DNA of 64,000 nucleotides, taken from NCBI GenBank assembly GCA_038087875.1, contig CM075982.1, positions 15,562,001 through 15,626,000 on the forward strand, in the 5' to 3' direction. This document shows positions 1 through 64,000 of this stretch, piece after piece. A model generated the notes under the pieces. The model was given only the letters and a program-made list of their open reading frames with translations, was not told where the DNA came from and did no database searches. Positions within the stretch are counted from its first letter, which is position 1. Each line of letters opens with the position of its first letter. Source of the stretch: Malacoraja senta. Taxonomy: Eukaryota. The position numbers and the translations under genes are program-made.

Positions 1-1344
1 ATTATTTTTCTGCTGGTATCTTGATAAGATGGCATGGGTAAGAATGATGTTTTGTGCATGTGCAGCTAGAGTGAAATGTTGTTAAGAATATTCGAGAAAT
101 CTAAGATTTCTGGGCAAACATGTTTGTAACTGCTTCTGTCTTTAGCACTTGCATATTTTGTGCTACTCCAGAGGTCCTTTGACATAGAATTTGCTGTGAT
201 AAGATTAAAGCTCTTTCTCAGATTATTTGTCATTTCTCAGCTACTTTCCCCTTTGAGAAAACAAGTCGAGCAATAACTACAAATAAACTATTAGCATTTC
301 AGGTCTGGGGCCCTTCAGAACTCAAAGGGTCCCAAACCTGTAATGTTAACTGGTTTTCTTTTCACAGGTGCTGCCTGACCTAATGAGCTTTTCAATACTT
401 TTCTGATATCTAGCATCTGCAGTTTTCAAATTTAATTTTCTTCTGTATAAAAATGTTGGAATTACTTTCATTTCCTTTTTACATAATGGCTTTGAGCCCT
501 CTACAAATGTAAAATGATTGCAGAAGCTGCCTTTGCATGTCCTAAAGCAGTTAATATGTTATGATATATTCAACACATGTACCACTCATTGAAACACAGC
601 TATTTTAAAACACGGTGTAGATGTGAGTGGTTGCTTTGCAATTCAACTCAAACTTAAAATGGGGGCAGTCAGTTGACATCTTTAAATTATTTTACGAACA
701 ATTTGAGATCAAATAATTGTTCATAATTGATATTAGCCATAGAAAATCATGACAGTTACTTATTGATGCAGTGACATTTTTGAAGGATACCAGTCTATAG
801 ATAAACCACACAAATCAGTCTTTCCAAGCTTCTTTCAACATTAGTTTTGTTGAATTTTGAGTGTAGTTTTTAATAGTTAATTGAAGAGCAGAAAGAGAAG
901 TCCTAATTATTTATTCCCATCATAATCTTGGCTATACTAATTTCCAGAGCAGCCATGATGTACACAAATTTGGGATGTTAGGAACAGTTGTTAAAACGTG
1001 TCACCTGGTGGAACCAGTTTCCTTTTTAATAGAGAGATTTGATCACCGAGTACTTTAATTGCCTCTTCAAAATGTAAAATTGTGTTTTCCATGAGACCAA
1101 ATATATTTGTATTCTGATGCGTAATATTGCAAAATTTGCAATTAACACAACGAATTACAGTAGCCCTATTAATGGTGACTTTATTTGCGAAACAAGCTTT
1201 GCTCGATTATGACATCCTGTGGTCATATAAGGTACAATGCATTACATGATAGTTATGTGTTAATTTGTAAAGCTTTTTCTTGTGTTGCTTTATTTAATTT
1301 TAGTTTTTCCTTAAATAGTAAACATTTTGTTTTGTATTCCTTAG

Positions 1345-1407
1345 ATTTGTCTCACCAAGATCATTCTGAAACTAGTGAAGACCCAGAAGTCGAAGTAACT
1401 ATTGAAG
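1345..1407 (+). CDS. GTF2I: GTF2I exon, copy 1 (63 bp, equivalent to human alternative exon 12 / 'exon B'), GC donor
   Basis: ttag|ATTTG...ATTGAAG|gcaagc; encodes (D)[20 protein letters not shown] vs human [21 protein letters not shown]; phase 1-1. Confidence 0.9.
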
Positions 1408-2415
1408 GCAAGCATTTAACTGATTCGGTAGTTGGCACAGAAATTACCATATAGTAGTTGAATCTGAATAAATTGGTGTTCGGTTCTGTTCTATTACATT
1501 CCACAACAATTGTGAGTCTCTGAGGGAGGGAATGGTCAGGTGGGTGGTGAATTTGAATTTAAAAGTCATAGATGCAGCCGGTTGTGCTTTTCCTTTTTTT
1601 GTTCCTACATTCCTGATCTGCTCCTCTTTACCCTCAAATTTCGGCAAATTGCATTGAGGGTGTAAAATTATTTTATTTCATAATTCAAAATTGTACTTGA
1701 AAATCAAAATGTCCTTTAATTTAAGAGACTTTATTCTTCTGGCTGGTCAGCTTTGATTTCACCTGATGTCTGTAGAGCAGTACTTGATGAAAAAAGAAAA
1801 TGTCTGGGAGCCGGCATGAAAGAAGTGCACGTGGAAGCTTTTAAACTATACTAGACCAATCTGACTTGTGCCAAGATATCAGTTTTCTTTCAAATAAAAT
1901 GGAATATTTCAATGCGTCTATGTTCTTGTAACAAACAGAAGAGCATAATGGAGAATGAAGAAACGGTTGGTTATTGTAAAATAATTTATCTTGATAGATT
2001 GAGAAAAACGTGGGTGCGCTTTCTATGCAATCCTCGTTTGTTATTCATAATGGGGTATTGGTATAGACATTGGAGTGTACCTTTGCTAAAAATGTTTCCA
2101 GCAATTTTTATTTTTTATTCATACATTACCAGCAGTTTTGTTTATTTTTCATTTATGTAAACACTGCCTAGTTGAGTGCACATGCTAGATTCTATATATC
2201 CCACGATTCTGCTTACTTTTATTTAAGTCCTCATTCAGTGTGGCCATTTGGATACTTGGGATTCCAAATTTTTGTCATGAATGCATCAACAAGATTACAG
2301 TGAAACCAAAAGGCACTGTAGATCAGGTTATTTGGATAAGTATGAGAGGCCATTTATGGTTCACAGTTTTATGAAAAGCATGGAAAAGTTATGAAACTGC
2401 ATTTTCTATTTTTAG

Positions 2416-2514
2416 ATGATGAATATTTGCCACCGAATAAGCGACAAAAGTATACAGTACAGCTGACGGATGCCGGGGCCTCCGCGAAGCGGAAAAGTAG
2501 GGAATTCAATTTTG
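2416..2514 (+). CDS. GTF2I: GTF2I exon, copy 1 (99 bp; NLS/basic region before I-repeat 2)
   Basis: tttag|ATGAT...TTTG|gtgagt; (D)DEYLPPNKRQKYTVQLTDAGASAKRKSREFNF vs human DDDYSPPSKRPK...AGKRKVREFNF. Confidence 0.93.
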
Positions 2515-3141
2515 GTGAGTTAAAGTACCATTTCAATTTCTTGAAGATTTGTTTCCATTGCTAGATAAACTGGACCAATCATCAGACTTGCTAGATGCTA
2601 TGTATTCTATGTTTATGCGGAAATTACAATGGATATTTTAATAAATTTAATTGTAATTTTTGATTTTTCATTCTTAATGGTCTTTAATTAAACAATACAA
2701 AATACTTTTTGTAAATTTAGTTTGTTTTGTATCATTCATTTTCTATGTTGTACATTATGTTAAATTTGTTTTACTATAATGATTAGATTTTTCAATCCAG
2801 TAGGTGTGCAAGGAAAATTCATTTGTAAGATGGTTCATAAGTGACTTTTGTTCACAACATTCAATTTGGCTGATTCAACAAAATAAATAAAGTACAGAAC
2901 TTTGCTTTAACATCTCAACTGCAAATACTGCATAATTTAGACTTTTCATTATTAAACATTTGTGCTTGAAACAGACATTTGATTTATTTTGTCAGCGTCT
3001 TGAAATTCGTCTTGCATGTATTCTGTGTTTGCAGTAGGCAATATTTGATACACTCTGGTTTAAAGGTTTCTGCATTCATCACTACTTGGAGTCATTGCTG
3101 TGCACAAATTAATCAACGGGATTCACTGTATCTGGTATTAG

Positions 3142-3354
<213 letters not shown>

Positions 3355-4567
3355 TAATTATGGTTAATGTGAAGGCCAGCAAGTCGATTAGGGACGTGGG
3401 CAGAGGTGAGCGTGATTATGATACTGAGGGGGACAGTTATTAGACAATATAGGTGGCTATTACTAACCCAAGCTGATTGCATGAGATGGGCTGTACATTA
3501 TTGCAATGGTAAAGAGTATTCAATCTTGACTGATGATGGATTAAATTTATTGAACTGGTAATTGATGGTTGGAAATTTGTTGTATTTCATTCTACAATGT
3601 ATTCAGTTACTCGGATTGGTTCTTAACTAGTTCCATTGAAGCCAAATGCTTCCATGAAGAATGGCACAATATAGCTATGATCAAAAGGTCCTCAGTGTGA
3701 CATGGTAACGATGTTACCTGACTTGATGAGTGTTTCTGGCGCATTTTATTTCAATGGGACATTATAGCCTTGGGTTTAATGCTGTTGAATTATTACATTC
3801 AGTTGGCGGTTTCAGTCTATGCAGTTTACATTTCTACCATGCATTTATGTTTTTACACCTTGCTGCTAACTTCAAATGTATTTGTCTGATTTACATCATC
3901 TCCAGACCCACTATTGTTAACCAAGTGTTTATCACACACGAATCCAGCTCCATCATCCTTGCTGTCATTTTTTTTTAATCCATCTCTTCCTCCACTTTCT
4001 TGAATAACATTTTTGGGGCCTTTTCCTCCTTCCCTGCCTATTCTTTCCCCAATATTGCATCTTAAAATGGGCTTTGCCCCAGAGTATTTCCCAGTTTTGA
4101 TAAAGGTCACCAATCTGAAATGGTAATTTTAATTGTCTCCACTGAAACACCCTGATGACTCCCTCTGCATTTCTGACATTTTCTGTTTTAGACTTCAGCA
4201 TCTACAGTATTTTCCTGTTCTTAGAACCTACCAGTTACAATCTGAAGAGTCTGATGGAGTGGGCTGTTTAACTTTAGAACAAGAGAGGTTATGGGAAGAT
4301 TGACGAGGTGTTCAAATTATGAACATCATAAAGTATGTTAGGAGAACCTTTTCACTGACATGAGGATCAATAATTTGAGGACAAGGATTTAAGATTATTG
4401 ATAGAAGAATTAAAGGAGGTAAATTTACTTTTCAAATGGATACCAGAAACAATTCAGCATTAACTTTCAAAGAAGAATGGATAATGGGAATTGCAGGAGA
4501 TAAGGAGTAATGAAATGGTTCTAAGATGAGCTGTTACCAGGGTGGGCCAAATATAGTTTAAAAAAAT

Positions 4568-5095
4568 GCAGTTTTGGTGTCCTAATTTGAGGAAGAACAT
4601 TCTTGCTATTGAGGCAGTGCAGAGTAGGTTCACCAGGTTTATTCCCGAGATGGCGGGACTGACATATGAAAGAATGGATTGACTGGGCTTGTATTCACTG
4701 GAATTTAGAAGGATGAGAGGGAATCTTATAAAAACCTATAAAATTCTTAAAGGATTGGGCAGGCTAGATGCAGGAAAAATGTTCCCAATGTTGGGGAAGT
4801 CCAAAACATTTTAAGAATAAGGGGTTGGCCATTTCGGACTGCGATGAGGAAAAATATTTTCCACCAGAGTTGTGAATGTGCGGAATTCCCTGCCACAGAA
4901 GGTAGTGGAGGCGAATATAAGGGATATATTCAAGAGATAGTCAGATATAGCTCTTGGGGCTAATGGAATCAAGGGATATGGGGCGAAAGCAGGAACGGGG
5001 TAGTGATTCTGCATGATTAGCCATGATCGTATTGAATGGTGGTGCTGGCGAAGGGCTGAATGGCCTACATCTGCATCTGTTTTCTATGTTTCTAA
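4568..5095 (+). mobile_element. CR1 LINE 3' fragment
   Basis: QFW-P...E-VQ-RFTR-IP-like ORF2 C-terminus followed by a tttctatg-type tail. Confidence 0.75.
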
Positions 5096-5521
5096 TAGCC
5101 CTTTGTGCTGTAAAATTTCTAATGGTATCTGGAACTGTCATCTTATTTATTATCCGGGTTCCTATTTTTCCTACCTCTAAATATCAGCCTAATGTCTTTT
5201 GCGGGGTTATTAAAGAAAAATATACGTAAATTTCTTGGTTTGGATGCATCTTTGTTTTAGTTTGGTGATAATGCATTGTCTTATCAGTGAATTAAGCCAG
5301 CTTGCTTAGTCTGCAGAACTAGACTTCAAGGTTTGGTAGGATATCTCATGAAGCTTAAAAAATCTGCTCTCCCACATTTTTCATTGCTCTATATTGAGAA
5401 ATGTCATTCTGCAATTTGGTAATGTTCCTATTCAACCCTTTGCATTTAAGTATGTTCACTGCAAAGTGGAGTGTAAGTAATTTAGAACAGGTATTGTATG
5501 AAGCTACTATAATAGATCTAA

Positions 5522-5755
<234 letters not shown>

Positions 5756-7802: not shown

Positions 7803-7956
7803 TTAAGAAGGAACTGCAGATGCTGGAAAATCGAAGGTAGACAAAAATGCTGGAGAAACTCAGCGGGTGAAGGGTTCCTGCCCGAAACATTGCCTATTTC
7901 CTTCGCTCCATATAGATGCTGCCTCACCCGCTGAGTTTCTCCAGCATTTTTGTCTA
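7803..7956. mobile_element. Short Penelope-derived hairpin repeat with 14-bp target-site duplication
   Basis: Inverted arms tagacaaaaatgctggagaaactcagcgggtga / tcacccgctgagtttctccagcatttttgtcta; acttctaaaaatat at 7789-7802 and 7957-7970; same ends as the Penelope element at 30240. Confidence 0.75.
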
Positions 7957-8628: not shown

Positions 8629-11600
8629 CAGGGCCGTGAAACTAATTTTAGGTCACGGACCAGGTAGGGCAAAGTACGACTTCACGCGGGCCGGATCAGT
8701 TGTGCACGCGTGAACGCACGCGCACGTGCTCCCACAGATTTTGTTGCTTTCATTTTTTCAACCTGCTCTCATGTGTCTCAGTCTCTGCTATAACTACAAA
8801 GTGTTTCACTTTACGAATTTCGTTTCTTTTGAAGATTGCCTAGCAAGCATTACTTTTATAATTGGTATTAACTTACAGTTGTAGGCTACAAGAAATTTGT
8901 GATGAGAGAGAGAAAAAACAATGCTATATTGGCTAATAATTTGAAATCGAACATTAGCAGACACAAATGTAGACCTAACGAAACAACTTGTTTCGTTAGG
9001 TCTACTTCTCCACCACCATTTTAGCACTGATATCTAAGAGACTCCGAGGTTGTGGCCTCTCCCAGTCAGTGCGGGTTTCTGGAACGATCGGGAAACTGGG
9101 AAGGGCCTCGAACAGAGACGGTTTGCGGTCGGCTGAGCTCTCTCCTCCGCCATGAGAGAAAAGTACCCACCATGCAACCCACACCGCTGCAATGTTGGGG
9201 GGGTTTTCCTGACAGCATTCGAACCCAGCACCCAGCCGCTCCGTACTGCACAACCTAACCCCGCTCAGTGCCCACCCCTGCCTCGTCATTGGCACAGCTG
9301 ACTGCCCAGAGGGTAGTCCCTTCTATTGGGCCAGCCTGGTGCCAGTCACGTGGGATGACGGCCAGCCCGTTTGTCTGAATCTCACCGCGTTCGGACCTGC
9401 CCCCCAAGCAGCATTTGCGGTTTGATTGGTCAGGTCGGGTGTCAGTCAAGGAGTCGTCACAATGCTGGCAGCGCGCAGCCGAGACTTCTCACACCATATA
9501 AGGAGCGCGCGGCTGACTAGGAAGATGGGTCACGCACACGAGCAGCGGCTCAGGGGAAGCCCAGATGCCCCGGAACTGGGGACATCTGCAGCCCAATCTG
9601 GTAGCGGGCCAGACTGTAGCGTTGTTCCAAATTCCTGCCATCAGTGGTGCTCCACTTCTGATCACTGCCTGTGCATGCGACTCGAGAGGCTATGGGTGGG
9701 GGGGGGGTGTGATTAAAATGCAGAGTTTTATTGGTTGTCAGAGAGGGATTTCCACGTACGACAAGCTTTTTGAAGAAATTTTGTTCTGTCATCCCGTTCG
9801 CAATTTAAAAAAAAAAAATGTTGCATGACTATTGAATCGCTGGATGAAAGTTGGGCCCAACTTCAACGCCTTCAAAATCACGGATCGCAAGTTCAGGACC
9901 AAAAAAAAGGTATGTACTGTAGGACGTTTAATTAATATTTTATCTAGTTTTTGGTATAATTTCATTTTAATCTGATGCGAAATATGTTATTGAGGCCCCT
10001 ATATCGGCCGTGTCTTGCCTGCCGGCTGTGAGTGAGCAAAATCCGATCTCTATCATAATCCACAAACATCCACTGTCAAGAAAATCAAATTCATTATTTT
10101 TTTGCACAATCGTGTCACAAGAACTAAATTATCTATATTTTGTGTTATTGTCTATCCATGATCAATATTTTCATACTAAATATCTGACTAAAAACTTCCA
10201 CAGTACATAGTTTTTAGTTGGATATTTAGTATGAAAATATTGATCATGGATAGATAATTACACAAAATATAGATAATTTAGATGTTATGACACGATCGTG
10301 CAAAAAAAATAATATTTTTATTATCTTGAGAGGGGATGTTTGTGGATTTTGAGCACATGTCTGTAAAATGGCCCTTGCCTGCTGCAGTGTTATAAACCAA
10401 CAGAGAAAAATTTATGGGAATTAAACATTCAATTCCTTCCATTTGGCAAAGAAATTCATGACAAAGTGAGATTTAAAAATCATGTTATATTGTGAATTTT
10501 TGTGTGAATGGGATCAGTTTGTTATCTGGATACTTTGGCTATTTAAAACAAATATTTTAGCCTTTTCTTAAGAATGGGATAGATGTTTAGATCTAGTAAT
10601 TGAATTTAGATGAATTTAGTTGGGCATTTACTATTTGTTTTAACTTTTAACTTGTGTTAGGCTTTTTGTTGAACAAAATCATTTCTACTTTTTTTCTAAA
10701 ACTGCAAATAAAAACTTGTTTCTACTTAATGTTGTTCAGTGGTTTTTTTCTTTACATTTTTCAGATGCCTCCGAAGAAGAAACGCAGAATTGTCAGTCCA
10801 AATGCCCAGCTTGGAATAGCTAGAGCTCACCATGAAGTGAATTTCTCTGTCATGCCCGAGTCTAAGAGGGATCTTAAAAATGGACACATCTTGTACTTGT
10901 ATACCTCGTTTGGAAAAAGTCAGTCTGAAACAGAGTCGGCTGAGTTCACATTGCTCTTTGTCGGATGCAGAAGGCTATTCATTTGCTGCTGTTAACTCAA
11001 GGGTGAGGACTCTCGTTAACCGGACTTTGCTCAAGTTTAAAAAAAACTCAGCAATCCCAAGGAACTTGAAAAATTTACGGAAATTTGTGATGAAACTTTA
11101 AAACTTCCAGAAGGCAGTCAACACATTTATTTAGATGATATTCCACTGCCTGATTGATGCTCACGATCCTGAATCCTTGACATCTGCCGAAAGCCAAGAG
11201 ACCATATTTCTAGACACTGAGGACATTGGCGATGACAGTCATAGTCTGCATCCTCCACTGAATCTAGCAACGCCAACGACAGCTGCTGCCTCTCCTGAAC
11301 CAATGCCATCGACATCTAGTGTTTCAACAAGATGTAGCAGAGAACTTGTAAGTCTTTCATCAAGGAAACATAAAAATGAAGAAAAGACTAAACTTTCTGT
11401 CTATCTCCAAGATCGCTCTTGCACTAAAGTATCGCACAAAGATCAGTGAACTTAGGGCACAGTTGAAAACTCCCAAACATGTAGTTAATCAAACCTTAAA
11501 GAGAAAGCAAAACCAAATAGATTTGATGGACAGAAAGATTCAGGAACAAAACCAAATTACGTGGGAATACTTTGGCATGAGAGCTTGCTGAAACCAAGGC

Positions 11601-14219
11601 AGAGTTTTTGAAACTTAAAAAAGCACACAGACAATTGCTCAAATTTCATGGCAGTAAGAAAAAGAGGAAAACTGTTTCGATTCGCCAATACAGAAAAGTT
11701 CAGGAAAAACTAAAGGACAGGGAAGAGGATGTGAGACGCCTCAAATTTGACAATCTTGTCCTCAAAGAAACAATCGAAACTCTGGAGGCTGCCAGTATTG
11801 TCAAGTCAAAGGTGGACCAGAAGACTTATTCCTCAACGACAAGGATGCATGTGTTTGACTGTATTGTAAACAAAACTCCTACAGCAAACATTCCAATCCT
11901 GATCCGCCAGTTGCACAAGTGGAGTGGACTTGATCTGGATAGTGATCCTCAACGCAGTGCAGTTGAACTTATGGCCTGAGAATTGGGAGCTGTTGCTGAG
12001 TTATACAGCACAGATGATCCTAGCAACAAATGATTCGACTGTTGGTTTTGATGTAACCGCCCAAGAAGACACCCATATTAACAGTGTACACTTCACCACC
12101 ACAAATTAATGTCTTTCTGCAGCAGTCGATGAATTGGCTGGTGGGACTGCTGAGGACCATGCTCAACATATTTGCGATACTGTTGACAATTTGTGTGAAA
12201 CTTACACTTATTTTAATGAGCAGCGGATTTCCAAGACACCAGGCAAACGATGATAGACAACATTACAAATACACTGAGTGATGGGTGTGCAGCTATTTAT
12301 GCTGCTATTAGGATTGTTAACAGTGAGTGGGGTAAATCTTTGAATGAGCTCTACTGCCATTTGCATCCTCTTGACTCCATCGCAGCGCCAGTTCTCTCAG
12401 CCCTCAAAAAGCACAAACAATCCAGAGGCAAAGTCTTGTTTGGTAAGGACTGTCTAGCAAGAAATGTCATACTGCAGATGAACAAACAAGAATGGAAGGG
12501 GACGCAAAAGGATGTTACATTTTTGGATGAAAGGAACATCCCCCGAGGTGTCCCCCCACGGTACCGTGGCAACCGATTACATATACTTTCCATATTAGTG
12601 GCAAGCTCATAGAACATTATGATGACTTTGTTGCCTTGCTGAATAGTGGAACATCCTGTGGGGGGATTGAGAAGCGCCATCCTCACCCAGGCTGCAGCAA
12701 AAGTAGAACTTCAGATATTGGGCTTACTTGGCAAATATCTGACTCGGCTTTGGATGAAGCCCTTCTACACTTCAAGCCAGAATCAGTTCAACCATGTTGA
12801 TGGCATCAAAGTGGTTAAAGGGGTGATTGCTGCTCTAAAGAAAGCCACACAAAATCCAGAGAACTTGATATTGGCAAGGGAAGATTTCTTCGGGGAGGAG
12901 GTGCATCTTGATGCCATGTTGACAAAACTTCGGGAGCTACCAGTACATCCACAGTTCAGTTCAATGATGAGCAGCTGTCTTCAAGCTGTCATCACTGTGT
13001 TGGAAAGGCAATATAGTAAATACTTTGAACTTGATGTAACTGAGAAACTGAAGGAGGAGACTGCATCAGCAAGATCAAACAACATTGATGTGGAGGAGAT
13101 AATGGGGATGTTTAGCTCATCGAAACTCAAATGTCCCATGTGTTATTTGTCATGTAGAATGCGGGCCTGCAAGAATAGAACAATCAACTTCCTTTATAAT
13201 CTCGAGGAGCAACATAGGGAGGAGGTGCTCTGTAAGGCAATGAAATGGGGGAGAGTGCAGAGGAACAGATGGAAGAAAAAAACAGAAGGAATTGAGAGCA
13301 GAAATCATCAAGCAACAGAAAGATAAGGAGCATGCTCGGGACACGAAAGAGGAAAAAAATAGGGGGAAAAAGAATCTGATTGAGACAGCATTTGCAGAGA
13401 TTATCCGAATTTGGACTACTCCAAATGTGATGATCTACAGGACATACTTAATGGGAAAGTAGTGGGCAGAAAGACATGTCATGCATGGTTTGAAGAGCAA
13501 AAACTTGAAGTTTACAATGCCAACATTGAAGTTGAGGAAAAACAAGGTGTACAGAGTTGCGTATTGGTTGCAGTCTGAGGTTTATGATAATGCTACTGAT
13601 TATGGTATGCCAATGTACCAGCTAGCAGCTGATGTTCTCCATGAAGACTTGGTCTTTTGCTAGAAATTGTAATTTCTTTACCTGTCTGTTACGGATTTAC
13701 AGCATATAATACAATAATATTAAAGTTCTGATCTTGAGAATATCACATTTTTGAATTTTCAAGGCAGTCTGGGTGTTTATTATTATTTCCGTCACAACTG
13801 TTAATTTTGTAATCAGCTACTTAATTTGGTAATTAACTAATTATATACTTTAATTTCAGGTCATCCAAGTAAGATGTATCATATTTGTTTCAGAATGCTT
13901 CCATCTATAATTGAAAAATTAATTCAGTTATCTTAATTTTTAAGAAAGTTATGGGCTTTTATATCAATTGACTCCTCGATCACAGCTTTTGTGTTAAGTT
14001 AATGGAACAGCAATAGGGAACAAGATGCTAATTTCTGAGTATGAAAATGACCATAACTTTTTTAATACTGAAGATATAAAAATGAATTAGGTATCGAATT
14101 AAAATTCTTTTTATGCTTTATCCGATGGGATAAATTACAGGCATGATTTTGAAAAATCTCAAAATTTTGCAACATCCCTACAGATTCGACCCCTGTGGGC
14201 CGGTAGTTTGACACCCCTG
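8629..14219. mobile_element. hAT-Charlie-type element (middle shell of nest 1)
   Basis: Ends cagggccgtgaaact / agtttgacacccctg; TSD ctctagtt / gtctagtt (7/8 match; resembles the Charlie NTCTAGAN target preference). Confidence 0.7.
10765..13663 (+). pseudogene. Degenerate DDE DNA transposase (unassigned family) with N-terminal NLS, coiled-coil-like region and C-terminal spindlin-like domain
   Basis: Frameshifted ORF pieces join into MPPKKKRR..., GFDVTAQE (D, 12050), SDGCAA (D, 12280), CHLH (12355-12366), PRYRGNRLHIL, LGLLGKYLT, NNIDVEEIMGMFS (E, 13093); stop at 13661-13663; likely element right end acatcccta at 14180. Confidence 0.75.
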
Positions 14220-15050
14220 GTCTAGTTTATTTATCACTATTTCACTCGGAATCCCTCGCGACCTCTCGCGGAACCCGAGCGTTCCGGGGAACCGCGGTTG
14301 AGAAACTCTCTAATGCCTTAGTGCAATACTGCCGTACAGCAAAGTTAATCTTCTAACTGGGATCACCTCCACTGTCCCTATTCCCGTAGCTGCAGTTGTG
14401 CATAGCTTCTCATTACAGTTTTCATGCCGTTTAACTCTTCAGCCACTCTCATCCCTAGCTTAGTAATTGCAGTTTTTGATTTGTATTGGATTAATTGAAT
14501 CTTGCCATGCACCTGGTCGTTTCTCTGGTCCATTTATGCCCACTTGATATCTGTATTGGGATTGGTTTATTAGTCTCATGGGTACCAAGATACAGCAAAA
14601 AGCTTTGTTTTGCGATTCATCCAGACAATTCATACCATATGCAGAGCTGCCAAGTAGTACGGATTTTCCTTATTTTGTACGGAAATGCGATAAGAATACT
14701 GATGTATGATTTTGCGTTGTTAAATACGGATTAAAAAAAAATCGGTATTTAACAACGCAAAATTGACCACAGACAATCGTAACAATGAGTCACCGGTGTA
14801 CCAGCCGAGGTGCAGCAGGCAGGTGGGAACATCCGAGATCGGCCTGACTTCCTATTTCATTAACATACCACTCGCCAAGGGAAATGTAATAAACCCGGTG
14901 AATTTGACTTGAGATCTTGCTGCTTAAAAAATGCAAGGATATAAAAAGTCATACTGTACCTCTAAAAATGATAGATTAAATCTATTAGTATTTTAAATTT
15001 CAAGATCTGGATGATTTTTTTTGTAAGCGTTGATCTATTTGGGGTTAAGA

Positions 15051-34856: not shown

Positions 34857-35056
34857 NNNNNNNNNNNNNNNNNNNNNNNNNNNNNNNNNNNNNNNNNNNN
34901 NNNNNNNNNNNNNNNNNNNNNNNNNNNNNNNNNNNNNNNNNNNNNNNNNNNNNNNNNNNNNNNNNNNNNNNNNNNNNNNNNNNNNNNNNNNNNNNNNNNN
35001 NNNNNNNNNNNNNNNNNNNNNNNNNNNNNNNNNNNNNNNNNNNNNNNNNNNNNNNN
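34857..35056. other. Assembly gap (200 N)
   Basis: Run of exactly 200 N. Confidence 1.
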
Positions 35057-58150: not shown

Positions 58151-59781
58151 GTAAGAAGTGGAGTAACTTCCCTTTATAATTGTAAGGCCTGAGAAAATGA
58201 AATGAGTCTGTTGTCTCAGCAGTAACAAAACATGAATGCAGAAGCGTTTGAAATGACGGTTTTTCATTTTTTTATCTTAGAAGTAGTATAAATTTCTAAC
58301 ACAATAAATTGTTCAGCAAATTGCTGGTCTACCAATTGGTAGACTGCAAATGATTGTAATTAGATATATGAAAAATAGAAAATTTAGTTTTGTGGGCCAC
58401 TTGGTTTCATTCATTGATTTTCAGACAAACATTGCAAATTATTTTTCTGCTGGTATCTTGATAAGATGGCATGGGTAAGAATGATGTTTTGTGCATGTGC
58501 AGCTAGAGTGAAATGTTGTTAAGAATATTCGAGAAATCTAAGATTTCTGGGCAAACATGTTTGTAACTGCTTCTGTCTTTAGCACTTGCATATTTTGTGC
58601 TACTCCAGAGGTCCTTTGACATAGAATTTGCTGTGATAAGATTAAAGCTCTTTCTCAGATTATTTGTCATTTCTCAGCTACTTTCCCCTTTGAGAAAACA
58701 AGTCGAGCAATAACTACAAATAAACTATTAGCATTTCAGGTCTGGGGCCCTTCAGAACTCAAAGGGTCCCAAACCTGTAATGTTAACTGGTTTTCTTTTC
58801 ACAGGTGCTGCCTGACCTAATGAGCTTTTCAATACTTTTCTGATATCTAGCATCTGCAGTTTTCAAATTTAATTTTCTTCTGTATAAAAATGTTGGAATT
58901 ACTTTCATTTCCTTTTTACATAATGGCTTTGAGCCCTCTACAAATGTAAAATGATTGCAGAAGCTGCCTTTGCATGTCCTAAAGCAGTTAATATGTTATG
59001 ATATATTCAACACATGTACCACTCATTGAAACACAGCTATTTTAAAACACGGTGTAGATGTGAGTGGTTGCTTTGCAATTCAACTCAAACTTAAAATGGG
59101 GGCAGTCAGTTGACATCTTTAAATTATTTTACGAACAATTTGAGATCAAATAATTGTTCATAATTGATATTAGCCATAGAAAATCATGACAGTTACTTAT
59201 TGATGCAGTGACATTTTTGAAGGATACCAGTCTATGGATAAACCACACAAATCAGTCTTTCCAAGCTTCTTTCAACATTAGTTTTGTTGAATTTTGAGTG
59301 TAGTTTTTAATAGTTAATTGAAGAGCAGAAAGAGAAGTCCTAATTATTTATTCCCATCATAATCTTGGCTATACTAATTTCCAGAGCAGCCATGATGTAC
59401 ACAAATTTGGGATGTTAGGAACAGTTGTTAAAACGTGTCACCTGGTGGAACCAGTTTCCTTTTTAATAGAGAGATTTGATCACCGAGTACTTTAATTGCC
59501 TCTTCAAAATGTAAAATTGTGTTTTCCATGAGACCAAATATATTTGTATTCTGATGCGTAATATTGCAAAATTTGCAATTAACACAACGAATTACAGTAG
59601 CCCTATTAATGGTGACTTTATTTGCGAAACAAGCTTTGCTCGATTATGACATCCTGTGGTCATATAAGGTACAATGCATTACATGATAGTTATGTGTTAA
59701 TTTGTAAAGCTTTTTCTTGTGTTGCTTTATTTAATTTTAGTTTTTCCTTAAATAGTAAACATTTTGTTTTGTATTCCTTAG

Positions 59782-59844
59782 ATTTGTCTCACCAAGATCA
59801 TTCTGAAACTAGTGAAGACCCAGAAGTCGAAGTAACTATTGAAG
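59782..59844 (+). CDS. GTF2I: GTF2I exon, copy 2 (duplicate of 1345-1407, GC donor)
   Basis: Same sequence as copy 1. Confidence 0.9.
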
Positions 59845-60852
59845 GCAAGCATTTAACTGATTCGGTAGTTGGCACAGAAATTACCATATAGTAGTTGAAT
59901 CTGAATAAATTGGTGTTCGGTTCTGTTCTATTACATTCCACAACAATTGTGAGTCTCTGAGGGAGGGAATGGTCAGGTGGGTGGTGAATTTGAATTTAAA
60001 AGTCATAGATGCAGCCGGTTGTGCTTTTCCTTTTTTTGTTCCTACATTCCTGATCTGCTCCTCTTTACCCTCAAATTTCGGCAAATTGCATTGAGGGTGT
60101 AAAATTATTTTATTTCATAATTCAAAATTGTACTTGAAAATCAAAATGTCCTTTAATTTAAGAGACTTTATTCTTCTGGCTGGTCAGCTTTGATTTCACC
60201 TGATGTCTGTAGAGCAGTACTTGATGAAAAAAGAAAATGTCTGGGAGCCGGCATGAAAGAAGTGCACGTGGAAGCTTTTAAACTATACTAGACCAATCTG
60301 ACTTGTGCCAAGATATCAGTTTTCTTTCAAATAAAATGGAATATTTCAATGCGTCTATGTTCTTGTAACAAACAGAAGAGCATAATGGAGAATGAAGAAA
60401 CGGTTGGTTATTGTAAAATAATTTATCTTGATAGATTGAGAAAAACGTGGGTGCGCTTTCTATGCAATCCTCGTTTGTTATTCATAATGGGGTATTGGTA
60501 TAGACATTGGAGTGTACCTTTGCTAAAAATGTTTCCAGCAATTTTTATTTTTTATTCATACATTACCAGCAGTTTTGTTTATTTTTCATTTATGTAAACA
60601 CTGCCTAGTTGAGTGCACATGCTAGATTCTATATATCCCACGATTCTGCTTACTTTTATTTAAGTCCTCATTCAGTGTGGCCATTTGGATACTTGGGATT
60701 CCAAATTTTTGTCATGAATGCATCAACAAGATTACAGTGAAACCAAAAGGCACTGTAGATCAGGTTATTTGGATAAGTATGAGAGGCCATTTATGGTTCA
60801 CAGTTTTATGAAAAGCATGGAAAAGTTATGAAACTGCATTTTCTATTTTTAG

Positions 60853-60951
60853 ATGATGAATATTTGCCACCGAATAAGCGACAAAAGTATACAGTACAGC
60901 TGACGGATGCCGGGGCCTCCGCGAAGCGGAAAAGTAGGGAATTCAATTTTG
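60853..60951 (+). CDS. GTF2I: GTF2I exon, copy 2 (duplicate of 2416-2514)
   Basis: Same sequence as copy 1. Confidence 0.93.
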
Positions 60952-61578
60952 GTGAGTTAAAGTACCATTTCAATTTCTTGAAGATTTGTTTCCATTGCTA
61001 GATAAACTGGACCAATCATCAGACTTGCTAGATGCTATGTATTCTATGTTTATGCGGAAATTACAATGGATATTTTAATAAATTTAATTGTAATTTTTGA
61101 TTTTTCATTCTTAATGGTCTTTAATTAAACAATACAAAATACTTTTTGTAAATTTAGTTTGTTTTGTATCATTCATTTTCTATGTTGTACATTATGTTAA
61201 ATTTGTTTTACTATAATGATTAGATTTTTCAATCCAGTAGGTGTGCAAGGAAAATTCATTTGTAAGATGGTTCATAAGTGACTTTTGTTCACAACATTCA
61301 ATTTGGCTGATTCAACAAAATAAATAAAGTACAGAACTTTGCTTTAACATCTCAACTGCAAATACTGCATAATTTAGACTTTTCATTATTAAACATTTGT
61401 GCTTGAAACAGACATTTGATTTATTTTGTCAGCGTCTTGAAATTCGTCTTGCATGTATTCTGTGTTTGCAGTAGGCAATATTTGATACACTCTGGTTTAA
61501 AGGTTTCTGCATTCATCACTACTTGGAGTCATTGCTGTGCACAAATTAATCAACGGGATTCACTGTATCTGGTATTAG

Positions 61579-61791
<213 letters not shown>

Positions 61792-63004
61792 TAATTATGG
61801 TTAATGTGAAGGCCAGCAAGTCGATTAGGGACGTGGGCAGAGGTGAGCGTGATTATGATACTGAGGGGGACAGTTATTAGACAATATAGGTGGCTATTAC
61901 TAACCCAAGCTGATTGCATGAGATGGGCTGTACATTATTGCAATGGTAAAGAGTATTCAATCTTGACTGATGATGGATTAAATTTATTGAACTGGTAATT
62001 GATGGTTGGAAATTTGTTGTATTTCATTCTACAATGTATTCAGTTACTCGGATTGGTTCTTAACTAGTTCCATTGAAGCCAAATGCTTCCATGAAGAATG
62101 GCACAATATAGCTATGATCAAAAGGTCCTCAGTGTGACATGGTAACGATGTTACCTGACTTGATGAGTGTTTCTGGCGCATTTTATTTCAATGGGACATT
62201 ATAGCCTTGGGTTTAATGCTGTTGAATTATTACATTCAGTTGGCGGTTTCAGTCTATGCAGTTTACATTTCTACCATGCATTTATGTTTTTACACCTTGC
62301 TGCTAACTTCAAATGTATTTGTCTGATTTACATCATCTCCAGACCCACTATTGTTAACCAAGTGTTTATCACACACGAATCCAGCTCCATCATCCTTGCT
62401 GTCATTTTTTTTTAATCCATCTCTTCCTCCACTTTCTTGAATAACATTTTTGGGGCCTTTTCCTCCTTCCCTGCCTATTCTTTCCCCAATATTGCATCTT
62501 AAAATGGGCTTTGCCCCAGAGTATTTCCCAGTTTTGATAAAGGTCACCAATCTGAAATGGTAATTTTAATTGTCTCCACTGAAACACCCTGATGACTCCC
62601 TCTGCATTTCTGACATTTTCTGTTTTAGACTTCAGCATCTACAGTATTTTCCTGTTCTTAGAACCTACCAGTTACAATCTGAAGAGTCTGATGGAGTGGG
62701 CTGTTTAACTTTAGAACAAGAGAGGTTATGGGAAGATTGACGAGGTGTTCAAATTATGAACATCATAAAGTATGTTAGGAGAACCTTTTCACTGACATGA
62801 GGATCAATAATTTGAGGACAAGGATTTAAGATTATTGATAGAAGAATTAAAGGAGGTAAATTTACTTTTCAAATGGATACCAGAAACAATTCAGCATTAA
62901 CTTTCAAAGAAGAATGGATAATGGGAATTGCAGGAGATAAGGAGTAATGAAATGGTTCTAAGATGAGCTGTTACCAGGGTGGGCCAAATATAGTTTAAAA
63001 AAAT

Positions 63005-63532
63005 GCAGTTTTGGTGTCCTAATTTGAGGAAGAACATTCTTGCTATTGAGGCAGTGCAGAGTAGGTTCACCAGGTTTATTCCCGAGATGGCGGGACTGAC
63101 ATATGAAAGAATGGATTGACTGGGCTTGTATTCACTGGAATTTAGAAGGATGAGAGGGAATCTTATAAAAACCTATAAAATTCTTAAAGGATTGGGCAGG
63201 CTAGATGCAGGAAAAATGTTCCCAATGTTGGGGAAGTCCAAAACATTTTAAGAATAAGGGGTTGGCCATTTCGGACTGCGATGAGGAAAAATATTTTCCA
63301 CCAGAGTTGTGAATGTGCGGAATTCCCTGCCACAGAAGGTAGTGGAGGCGAATATAAGGGATATATTCAAGAGATAGTCAGATATAGCTCTTGGGGCTAA
63401 TGGAATCAAGGGATATGGGGCGAAAGCAGGAACGGGGTAGTGATTCTGCATGATTAGCCATGATCGTATTGAATGGTGGTGCTGGCGAAGGGCTGAATGG
63501 CCTACATCTGCATCTGTTTTCTATGTTTCTAA
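63005..63532 (+). mobile_element. CR1 3' fragment (duplicate of 4568-5095)
   Basis: Same sequence as copy 1. Confidence 0.75.
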
Positions 63533-63983
63533 TAGCCCTTTGTGCTGTAAAATTTCTAATGGTATCTGGAACTGTCATCTTATTTATTATCCGGGTTCCT
63601 ATTTTTCCTACCTCTAAATATCAGCCTAATGTCTTTTGCGGGGTTATTAAAGAAAAATATACGTAAATTTCTTGGTTTGGATGCATCTTTGTTTTAGTTT
63701 GGTGATAATGCATTGTCTTATCAGTGAATTAAGCCAGCTTGCTTAGTCTGCAGAACTAGACTTCAAGGTTTGGTAGGATATCTCATGAAGCTTAAAAAAT
63801 CTGCTCTCCCACATTTTTCATTGCTCTATATTGAGAAATGTCATTCTGCAATTTGGTAATGTTCCTATTCAACCCTTTGCATTTAAGTATGTTCACTGCA
63901 AAGTGGAGTGTAAGTAATTTAGAACAGGTATTGTATGAAGCTACTATAATAGATCTAAATCTTAACATTGTGTAAAATTTTAG

Positions 63984-64000
63984 CTCGAGCCACTCTTGCT
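63984..64000 (+). CDS. GTF2I: GTF2I exon, copy 2 (start of the I-repeat 2 core exon, cut by the window edge)
   Basis: tttag|CTCGAGCCACTCTTGCT, same as 5547-5563. Confidence 0.9.

What the first reader, a model, noticed from the sequence alone, without database searches (positions are those of the whole stretch)
10765..13460. Unclassified DDE transposase with a D / D / CxxH / E layout but atypical motifs
Seen after manual frameshift repair (roughly 950 aa): SV40-like NLS PPKKKRR, a long K/E/R-rich coiled-coil-like stretch, then TVGFDVTAQEDTHINSVHFTT, AVDELAGGTAEDHAQHICDTVDNL, SDGCAA, ELYCHLHPLD, PRYRGNRLHIL, LGLLGKYLTRLWM and SNNIDVEEIMGMFS. Known: a CxxH after the second Asp is shared by hAT, P, MULE and Kolobok transposases. 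I see no hAT RW motif, no SVERLFS-type dimerisation motif, and no BED or THAP finger, and the apparent terminus is ...CCCTA. Inference: a poorly characterised lineage or superfamily.
Basis: partly seen in the sequence, partly recalled or inferred. Interest (0 to 1): 0.7.

Follow-up and report, generated by a model that had tools for sequence, protein, structure and literature searches.

The report
Dead hAT-like transposon, unnamed family
This stretch is a dead, frameshifted copy of a cut-and-paste jumping gene whose enzyme is shaped like hAT transposases but belongs to a large, animal-wide family that no domain library or paper I could search names, and whose intact relatives duplicate 7 rather than 8 bases of the target.

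Summary
A full-length but dead transposase reading track runs on the + strand from 10765 to 13660. It has 12 frame changes and one in-frame stop.

No Pfam model matches any piece, or any of 52 intact relatives. The relatives are 900-1020 aa "uncharacterized" proteins of sponges, Hydra, molluscs, annelids, a priapulid, echinoderms, a sea spider and bony fishes.

Six independent insertions of two intact families carry TAGGTATGT...ACATACCTA ends and perfect 7-bp target duplications. I tested Kolobok, Dada, P and canonical hAT, and each fails at least one defining feature.

The family is best read as a deeply divergent hAT-like lineage with no BED finger. It has a small helical N-terminal domain, a coiled coil and a Spindlin-like tail.

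This scan has already reported the same family several times in this genome. I could not query Repbase or Dfam.

The parts
9617..9633 (+). Candidate outer 5' terminal inverted repeat (TAGCGTTGTTCCAAATT)
   Evidence: 13 of 17 bases match the reverse complement of the 3' end. Among the eight other sites in 128 kb with at least 13/17, it is the only one whose 7-base flank (9610-9616, CAGACTG) matches the 3' flank CAGATTC at 5 of 7. Summed contig depth rises from about 500 to about 2300 here, and contigs of the left-hand repeat stop at 9593-9608. Moderate confidence.
10053..10352 (.). Palindrome of two 144-nt arms (88% complementary, 12 nt apart) inside or at the 5' region
   Evidence: The outer 22 nt of each arm resemble the element's terminal repeat. 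Origin unexplained.
10330..10353 (+). Second terminal-repeat-like sequence (GAGGGGATGTTTGTGGATTTTGAG): either the alternative 5' end or a subterminal transposase-binding repeat
   Evidence: The motif AGG-N(1-2)-ATGTT occurs only three times in 128 kb: here, at the 3' end, and at 7886. Here and at the 3' end it is followed, after five bases, by ATTTTGAG. The very-high-copy 5' segment begins just downstream. There is no matching target duplication at this boundary.
10379..10644 (+). 5' segment kept in very-high-copy, internally deleted derivatives
   Evidence: Summed contig depth is 1e5-4e5 here against 2e3-1e4 over the coding part. Contig joints link 10604-10644 to 13710-13838 in four runs.
10765..13660 (+). 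Decayed full-length transposase reading track (965 codons, 12 frame changes, in-frame TAA at 12107-12109; stop at 13661-13663)
   Evidence: Relatives found.
10765..11121 (+). N-terminal basic motif (MPPKKKRR, NLS-like) and small helical domain with the NGH(V/I)L motif; presumed DNA-end-binding domain
11370..11800 (+). K/E/R-rich coiled-coil region
   Evidence: The profile's only sequence matches in the PDB are coiled coils, for example BICDR1 at E 0.0018. The window span 11370-11800 is approximate, placed from the profile tiling.
11800..13300 (+). RNase H-like catalytic core with an all-helical insertion domain (D 12050-52, D 12280-82, CxxH 12355-66, E 13093-95)
13387..13660 (+). C-terminal Tudor/Spindlin-like tail (broken by one frame change)
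   Evidence: A profile of 48 tails matches Spindlin-4, -3 and -1 at E 0.003-0.04. Three of the 48 tails match Pfam PTM_DIR17_Tudor, best E 0.0004.
13710..14180 (+). 3' segment kept in very-high-copy deletion derivatives
   Evidence: Depth is 2e5-8e5 here. It falls to about 27 in the bin 14319-14515.
14158..14180 (-). 3' terminal inverted repeat (reads TAGGGATGTTGCAAAATTTTGAG on the - strand)
   Evidence: It matches the TAGG(T/G)ATGT termini of intact relatives.
14181..14187 (.). 3' copy of the decayed 7-bp target-site duplication (CAGATTC; 5' copy CAGACTG at 9610-9616)
   Evidence: The 7-bp length was established on six intact insertions.

Best explanation
The stretch is an old, inactive, full-length copy of an autonomous cut-and-paste DNA transposon. 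It most likely spans 9617-14180; the alternative 5' end is about 10330. Its single intronless gene encoded a roughly 965-aa DDE transposase with five parts in order: an N-terminal basic NLS-like motif and small helical domain, a long coiled coil, an RNase H-like catalytic domain interrupted by a large all-helical insertion domain (the hAT architecture, with CxxH after the second Asp), and a Tudor/Spindlin-like tail. Shown: the fold, the conserved D/D/CxxH/E, the TAGG(T/G)ATGT terminal inverted repeats, the 7-bp target-site duplications in intact relatives, the multicopy state, and abundant internally deleted non-autonomous derivatives in runs that hold this sequence. Inferred: the enzyme binds the ends through the N-terminal helical domain, assembles through the coiled coil, excises the element by a hAT-type DDE mechanism, and integrates with a 7-bp stagger; the tail may tether it to marked chromatin. 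The family is a deeply divergent hAT-like lineage found across animals, without a Pfam model or a description in the searchable literature. It is not a canonical hAT, Kolobok, P, Dada or MULE element.
Against: No sequence-level link to hAT: no Pfam hAT model matches any of 52 members even at E<=10, and a family profile finds no transposase in the PDB. Identity to Hermes is about 10%. The TSD is 7 bp, not the hAT 8 bp. The fifth base of the terminus is T in the intact families (G in the skate copy), so the hAT YARNG rule is only partly met. In this copy the 5' end is ambiguous, and the TSD is only 5 of 7 at one candidate and absent at the other. Two further copies of another family (L010/L011) share a 4.9-kb block without recognisable inverted repeats or TSD. 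Transposition, hairpin chemistry and any role of the tail are untested. Repbase and Dfam could not be searched, so the family may already have a name.
Confidence: 0.8

Rival explanations
1. It is an ordinary member of the hAT superfamily: an already catalogued hAT subgroup that Pfam models simply miss.
For: Hermes is the best structural match by a wide margin, and the nearest named predicted-structure clusters are all hAT. It has CxxH, an all-helical insertion domain and a TAGG... terminus.
Against: The TSD is 7 bp in six of six clean insertions. There is no BED finger. No match to PF05699 or any hAT RNase-like Pfam model in 52 members. Hydra hATx/hATm, the catalogued hAT groups of one host, have BED, PF05699 and an 8-bp TSD (PMC8721813). 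The protein is about 300 aa longer, with a coiled coil and a Tudor tail.
Confidence: 0.25
2. It belongs to the Dada superfamily, which has DDE with C/DxxH, a 6-7 bp TSD, and is known from fish, oyster and polychaete.
For: The TSD length and host range overlap with the Dada description (PMC3706591).
Against: According to the paper, Dada has DxxH, N-terminal CCCC and C-terminal CCHC zinc fingers, multi-exon genes of about 1400 aa, no terminal inverted repeats, and inserts in snRNA/tRNA genes. This family has CxxH, no such fingers, one ORF and clear TIRs. ARAGORN finds no tRNA gene at three reconstructed empty sites, and Rfam finds no RNA gene in the window. The empty sites were not scanned for snRNA genes.
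Confidence: 0.03
3. It belongs to the P superfamily, which has a 7-8 bp TSD and a DNA-binding domain, coiled coil and catalytic domain in that order.
For: Foldseek lists the P element transposase at E 2e-4. A 7-bp TSD and an N-terminal domain followed by a coiled coil recall P; that comparison is from my own knowledge.
Confidence: 0.05
4. It is a Kolobok or MULE/IS256-type element.
Against: Kolobok makes TTAA duplications, has RR..YY ends, and nearly always has a zinc finger after C/DxxH; none of these is seen here. No match to the Pfam MULE or Mutator models. MULE TSDs are 8-10 bp and MULE TIRs are long (my own knowledge).
Confidence: 0.03
5. It is a broken copy of a domesticated host gene rather than a transposon.
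For: Many databases list relatives as ordinary 'uncharacterized protein LOC...' genes.
Against: Intact copies are multicopy, near-identical, lie at unrelated sites, and are bounded by TIRs and TSDs. This copy has 12 frameshifts. Its ends occur at very high copy as deletion derivatives.
Confidence: 0.02

Closest known systems
hAT superfamily transposases (Hermes, PDB 6dwz/4d1q/2bw3; hobo/Ac/Tam3, Buster, Charlie)
   Same: Both have an RNase H-like DDE core split by a large all-helical insertion domain, CxxH after the second Asp, the catalytic Glu in a conserved C-terminal helix block, short TIRs beginning T-A-G, and many internally deleted non-autonomous derivatives.
   Different: About 10% identity and no profile-level sequence match. 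The TSD is 7 bp, not 8 bp. There is no BED finger, and PF05699 is not detected. It adds an N-terminal helical domain, a coiled coil of about 150-200 aa and a Tudor/Spindlin-like tail. The protein is 900-1020 aa, against about 600-700.
Dada superfamily (Kojima and Jurka 2013, PMC3706591)
   Same: DDE with a C/DxxH signature, a 6-7 bp TSD, and overlapping animal hosts.
   Different: Dada has DxxH, two zinc fingers, introns, no TIRs and strict targeting of small-RNA genes. This family has CxxH, no such fingers, one ORF, clear TIRs, no tRNA gene found at the three reconstructed empty sites, and no RNA gene detected by Rfam in the window.
P element / THAP9 transposases (PDB 6pe2, 6p5a)
   Same: A 7-8 bp TSD, a DNA-binding domain followed by a coiled coil and a catalytic domain, and an insertion in the RNase H fold.
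   Different: No THAP domain, no match to P-element Pfam models, and a much weaker structural match than Hermes.
Kolobok superfamily (PMC9587614)
   Same: C/DxxH signature and a wide metazoan distribution that includes Hydra.
   Different: Kolobok has a TTAA TSD, RR..YY ends and a zinc finger between C/DxxH and E. None of these is present here.
IS256 / MULE (ISCth4, PDB 6xgx)
   Different: It aligns over fewer residues (255, rmsd 5.5 A), there is no Pfam MULE/Mutator match, and the TSD and TIR types differ.

Membership tests
hAT superfamily | RNase H-like DDE domain interrupted by a large all-alpha insertion domain | tested here: met
hAT superfamily | CxxH motif after the second catalytic Asp | tested here: met
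   C533 and H536 (P0036 numbering) are invariant in 13 and in 52 sequences. They are present in the window at 12355-12366.
hAT superfamily | 8-bp target-site duplication | tested here: not met
   Six independent insertions in two families have perfect 7-bp TSDs, and the eighth base differs in each.
hAT superfamily | C-terminal hAT dimerisation domain detectable by sequence (Pfam PF05699) | tested here: not met
   No match in 10 full-length proteins or 52 members, even at E<=10. The structural alignment does run to the C-terminal end of Hermes, residue 609.
hAT superfamily | N-terminal BED zinc finger | tested here: not met
   No Pfam match. The N-terminal 100 aa have one conserved Cys and model as five helices.
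hAT superfamily | Short TIRs fitting YARNG | tested here: inconclusive
   The ends read TAGGT in the two intact families and TAGGG in the skate copy. Positions 1-3 fit; position 5 fits only in the skate copy.
hAT superfamily | Excision through hairpins on flanking DNA | not testable with these tools
   This needs biochemical assays or excision footprints.
Dada | DxxH, CCCC and CCHC zinc fingers, no TIRs, insertion in snRNA/tRNA genes (PMC3706591) | tested here: not met
   This family has CxxH, no such fingers and clear TIRs. ARAGORN finds no tRNA gene at three reconstructed empty sites, and Rfam finds no RNA gene in the window. The empty sites were not scanned for snRNA genes.
Dada | 6-7 bp TSD | tested here: met
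   7 bp.
Kolobok | TTAA TSD, RR..YY termini, zinc finger after C/DxxH (PMC9587614) | tested here: not met
   The TSDs are 7 bp and varied, the ends are TAGG...CCTA, and there is no conserved Cys/His cluster between CxxH and E.
P superfamily | THAP domain and P-type catalytic/GTP-binding domains detectable by sequence | tested here: not met
MULE / Mutator | MULE transposase domain (PF10551/PF20700), 8-10 bp TSD | tested here: not met
   No Pfam match. The TSD is 7 bp.
Repbase/Dfam named families | Nucleotide or protein match to a deposited consensus | not testable with these tools

The most novel reading that the evidence does not exclude
The family is a previously unnamed superfamily-rank lineage of eukaryotic DDE transposons, sister to hAT. 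It would be defined by a 7-bp TSD, TAGGKATGT termini, a non-zinc helical end-binding domain, a coiled coil and a C-terminal Spindlin-type reader.
Probability: 0.25. Interest if true: 0.75.

Novelty: new variant of a known kind. Interest (0 to 1): 0.5.

Why it matters
A widespread family with intact, near-identical multicopy members (419 cluster representatives, many animal phyla) is missing from the domain libraries used to annotate genomes, so its copies are filed as anonymous host genes. Placing it (hAT-like fold, 7-bp duplication, defined ends) lets repeat annotation mask it. It adds a deep branch to the hAT/P/MULE/Kolobok/Dada group that shares C/DxxH. It also offers intact candidates (families P0207 and P0236) for testing whether a Tudor-type reader fused to a transposase biases integration. 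For this locus itself the result is ordinary: one dead copy in a repeat-rich skate region.

Tried and rejected
- Pfam on every open piece of the window copy, on 10 full-length relatives and on 52 members at E<=10: nothing on the core.
- Sequence and profile searches of the PDB: only coiled coils, plus weak Spindlin matches.
- Rfam on the window: nothing.
- Dada was considered seriously because of the 7-bp TSD and was rejected after reading the paper.
- Kolobok was rejected on TSD and termini.
- Hydra hATx/hATm were rejected as canonical hAT.
- Literature searches for a transposase fused to Tudor/Spindlin, or a hAT with a 7-bp TSD, found nothing relevant.
- An inverted-repeat scan and a local alignment of the skate 3' end against the upstream region gave no statistically clear partner: score 24 against shuffles of 22.7 +/- 2.9. 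Only motif-based searches gave candidates.
- There are no other copies of the element's ends inside the window.
- L001/L002 are decayed copies, and L009 lacks a recognisable 5' end. L010/L011 share 4.9 kb without TIR or TSD.
- Two contig look-ups returned no DNA because the sample files were too large.
- The N-terminal domain has no significant fold match.
- I did not build a repaired ORF or a consensus of the skate copy, and I did not test horizontal transfer.
Full report
**What is in the window**

On the + strand, a chain of open pieces in alternating frames runs from an ATG at 10765 to a stop at 13661-13663.

Instead I built a profile from 13 intact relatives and searched all stop-to-stop pieces with it. 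Fourteen pieces cover profile positions 1 to 925 in order. Between them are 12 changes of frame and one in-frame TAA (12107-12109). So this is a full-length but thoroughly dead gene of 965 codons. The codons for the two Asp, the Cys and His of CxxH, and the Glu are all still present (12050-52, 12280-82, 12355-57, 12364-66, 13093-95).

Notes from this scan say the genome is a skate's. I did not test that.

**Relatives**

No Pfam model matches any piece.

- A word search with the longest piece (227 aa) found 22 unnamed proteins.
- The exhaustive search found 419 cluster representatives at E<=1e-3, among them intact proteins of 900-1020 aa.
- A search with the core of one intact relative (P0036) found 137 more. 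Every name given by a source is 'uncharacterized' or 'hypothetical'.
- The hosts are Hydra (dozens of entries), Priapulus, Patella, Nucella, Littorina, Biomphalaria, Liolophura, Capitella, Asterias, Lytechinus, Anneissia, Nymphon, Oryzias, Scleropages and Misgurnus. Atlas clusters add sponges, and possibly fungi.
- Ten full-length proteins, and then 52 members, have no Pfam match on the core even at E<=10.
- A family profile finds only coiled-coil proteins and, weakly, Spindlin in the PDB.

The alignments show these blocks:
- an N-terminal MPPKKK motif and an NGHVL motif;
- a coiled coil;
- LGFDATTQEG (first Asp), GGTAxDY, MTDRAAVNHA (second Asp), LNELNCHLHPLD (CxxH), IPRYRGNRLHILFH, GKLLTGPWM and SARxHNIDAExxMGMFS (Glu);
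- a basic stretch;
- a tail with HxW...YxVxYW...LAADxxxGDL.

**Fold**

I modelled the core of P0036 (residues 345-875) with a 52-sequence alignment. The model has mean pLDDT 92.8 and pTM 0.86. Its order of elements is three strands, a helix, a fourth strand, a helix and a fifth strand, then about 255 residues of helices only, then the helix that carries the Glu. The first Asp lies on strand 1. The second lies just after strand 4. CxxH lies just after strand 5. This is an RNase H-like transposase fold with an all-helical insertion domain.

- Foldseek against the PDB puts Hermes (hAT) first at E 4e-6. Next come the P element (2e-4), ISCth4 of the IS256 family (2.5e-4) and Transib (0.03).
- In the ESM Atlas, the nearest clusters after the family's own are all hAT families (DUF659, Dimer_Tnp_hAT, ZMYM1-like, FAM200-ZBED5 RNase-like), with TM 0.59-0.73. 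Language-model neighbours agree, as leads only.

Its other test, 'a clear match to a named family', is met only at the level of fold.

**Ends and target duplication**

Protein P0207 is encoded identically at four unrelated places in one assembly. The copies share about 4.49 kb at 99.5-99.9% identity. With further members of this family and of the P0236 family, from a second assembly, I could read both ends.

- The ends are TAGGTATGTTA... / ...TAACATACCTA in one family and TAGGTATGTG... / ...CACATACCTA in the other.
- Six independent insertions are flanked by perfect 7-bp direct repeats: GTTCTTT, TACACTT, CAGAATA, CTATATA, TCAAATG and CTATTTG. In none does the match extend to an eighth base.
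- Some copies are irregular: a LINE insertion in L004, and damaged ends in L003 and L006.
- L010/L011 share 4.9 kb without recognisable repeats. I cannot explain those.

**The skate copy's ends**

The 3' end is clear. The sequence ...TTGCAACATCCCTA ends at 14180. It matches the family terminus, and the summed depth of public contigs falls from about 1e5 to about 27 just beyond it.

The 5' end is not settled. There are two candidates.

- *9617 (TAGCGTTGTTCC...).* It matches the reverse complement of the 3' end at 13 of 17 bases. Among comparable matches in 128 kb it is the only one whose 7-base flank (CAGACTG) resembles the 3' flank (CAGATTC, 5 of 7). Depth steps up there, and contigs of the neighbouring repeat stop at 9593-9608. 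One contig also joins 10302 to 13778, which puts sequence left of 10331 inside other copies.
- *10330 (GAGGGGATGTTTGTGGATTTTGAG).* It shares with the 3' end a motif that occurs only three times in 128 kb. It lies just before the segment that is present at very high copy. But it has no matching flank, and it sits inside the right arm of a 144-nt-arm palindrome (10053-10352).

I take 9617-14180 (4.56 kb, close to the 4.49 and 5.60 kb of intact relatives) as the more likely extent. On that reading the 10330 sequence is a subterminal repeat. My confidence is only moderate.

**Non-autonomous derivatives**

I laid contigs of four public runs on 9000-14900 at 80% likeness.

- The coding part has summed depth 2e3-1e4.
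- Positions 10379-10772 and 13334-14318 have summed depth 1e5-8e5.
- Many contigs join 10604-10644 directly to 13710-13838, skipping about 3.1-3.2 kb.

These are the internally deleted, MITE-like derivatives that a cut-and-paste family leaves behind, in very large numbers. All four runs are contigs, and each holds only a fifth to a quarter of the sampled words. The depths are therefore summed k-mer depths, not copy numbers, and the organisms are coded.

**Other domains**

- A profile of 48 C-terminal tails matches Spindlin-4, -3 and -1 at E 0.003-0.04. Three of the 48 tails match a Pfam Tudor model, PTM_DIR17_Tudor. That supports a Tudor-type barrel. I did not model it.

**Comparison with named superfamilies**

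- *Kolobok* makes TTAA duplications, has RR..YY ends, and nearly always has a zinc finger after C/DxxH. None of these is seen here.
- *Dada* shares the 6-7 bp duplication. But it has DxxH, two zinc fingers, introns, no inverted repeats, and inserts only in small-RNA genes. ARAGORN found no tRNA gene at three reconstructed empty sites, and Rfam found no RNA gene in the window. The empty sites were not scanned for snRNA genes.
- *P* lacks support from both sequence and fold ranking.
- *MULE* lacks a Pfam match, and its duplication length does not fit.
- *Canonical hAT* fits the fold and CxxH. It fails on the 8-bp duplication, on the BED finger and on the sequence-detectable dimerisation domain. 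The catalogued Hydra hAT groups hATx and hATm are canonical in all three respects (PMC8721813).

I therefore file the family as hAT-like in how it works, not as a demonstrated member of hAT as currently defined.

**Mechanism**

Shown:
- the catalytic architecture and its conserved residues;
- the defined ends;
- the 7-bp duplication;
- recent mobility in at least two invertebrate assemblies;
- deletion derivatives.

Inferred, from what is established for hAT and other DDE transposases:
- a multimer assembled through the coiled coil binds the TAGG ends through the N-terminal domain;
- it cuts the element out, probably through hairpins on the flanking DNA;
- it joins the 3' ends to target phosphates 7 bp apart.

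Whether the tail reads histone marks is speculation.

**Verdict**

The locus itself is a dead copy.

Earlier notes of this scan report the same family, including an intact 978-codon copy and the Spindlin-like tail, elsewhere in this genome. My fold result agrees with them and was obtained independently. As far as those notes show, these points are new here: the 7-bp duplication, the terminal motif, the exclusion of Dada, Kolobok and P, the N-terminal domain model, and the deletion derivatives.

Repbase and Dfam remain the decisive unchecked sources.

Noticed in passing
window 1-5563 and 58438-64000: The first 5.56 kb of the window recurs at 99.98% identity, in direct orientation, 58,437 bases downstream. 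This is either a large tandem or segmental duplication, or an assembly artefact. An N gap lies at 34857-35056.
   Followed up: partly
window 10053-10352: A palindrome with two 144-nt arms (88% complementary, 12-nt loop). The outer 22 nt of each arm resemble the transposon's terminal repeat in an inside-out arrangement. The arms are themselves repeated in public runs (summed depth 1e4-4e4). Its origin is unexplained: an inverted duplication across a transposon end, a foldback element, or a subterminal structure.
   Followed up: partly
L005, L017, L007, L013, L014, L015 (target duplications): All six 7-bp duplications have T at position 6, read in the element's orientation. With six cases this is only a hint of a target preference.
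   Followed up: no
L010:3757-8698 and L011:3757-8698: Two copies encoding the identical 942-aa transposase share a 4.94-kb block at 99.98% identity. The block starts TCTAATTGG and ends in a T-rich run, with no inverted repeats or target duplication. The copies may have been moved by another route.
   Followed up: partly
L004:3412-7539: A 4.1-kb non-LTR retrotransposon (endonuclease plus reverse transcriptase ORF) has inserted into the 5' untranslated part of an otherwise intact copy of the transposon.
   Followed up: no
window 9095-9608: A separate GC-rich repeat (summed depth of a few hundred) ends at about 9600, abutting the candidate 5' end of the transposon. Another repeat lies at 14516-14712, after about 200 bases of unique sequence.
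   Followed up: no
Atlas clusters: Two clusters of the family's own fold are labelled as commonest in Basidiomycota, which hints that the family may extend beyond animals. The labels rest on few members and were not checked.
   Followed up: no
P0200 (Nymphon striatum): One relative is annotated 'Protein bric-a-brac 2' and carries a BTB domain (PF00651). This is probably a gene-model fusion of a transposon copy with a neighbouring host gene.
   Followed up: no
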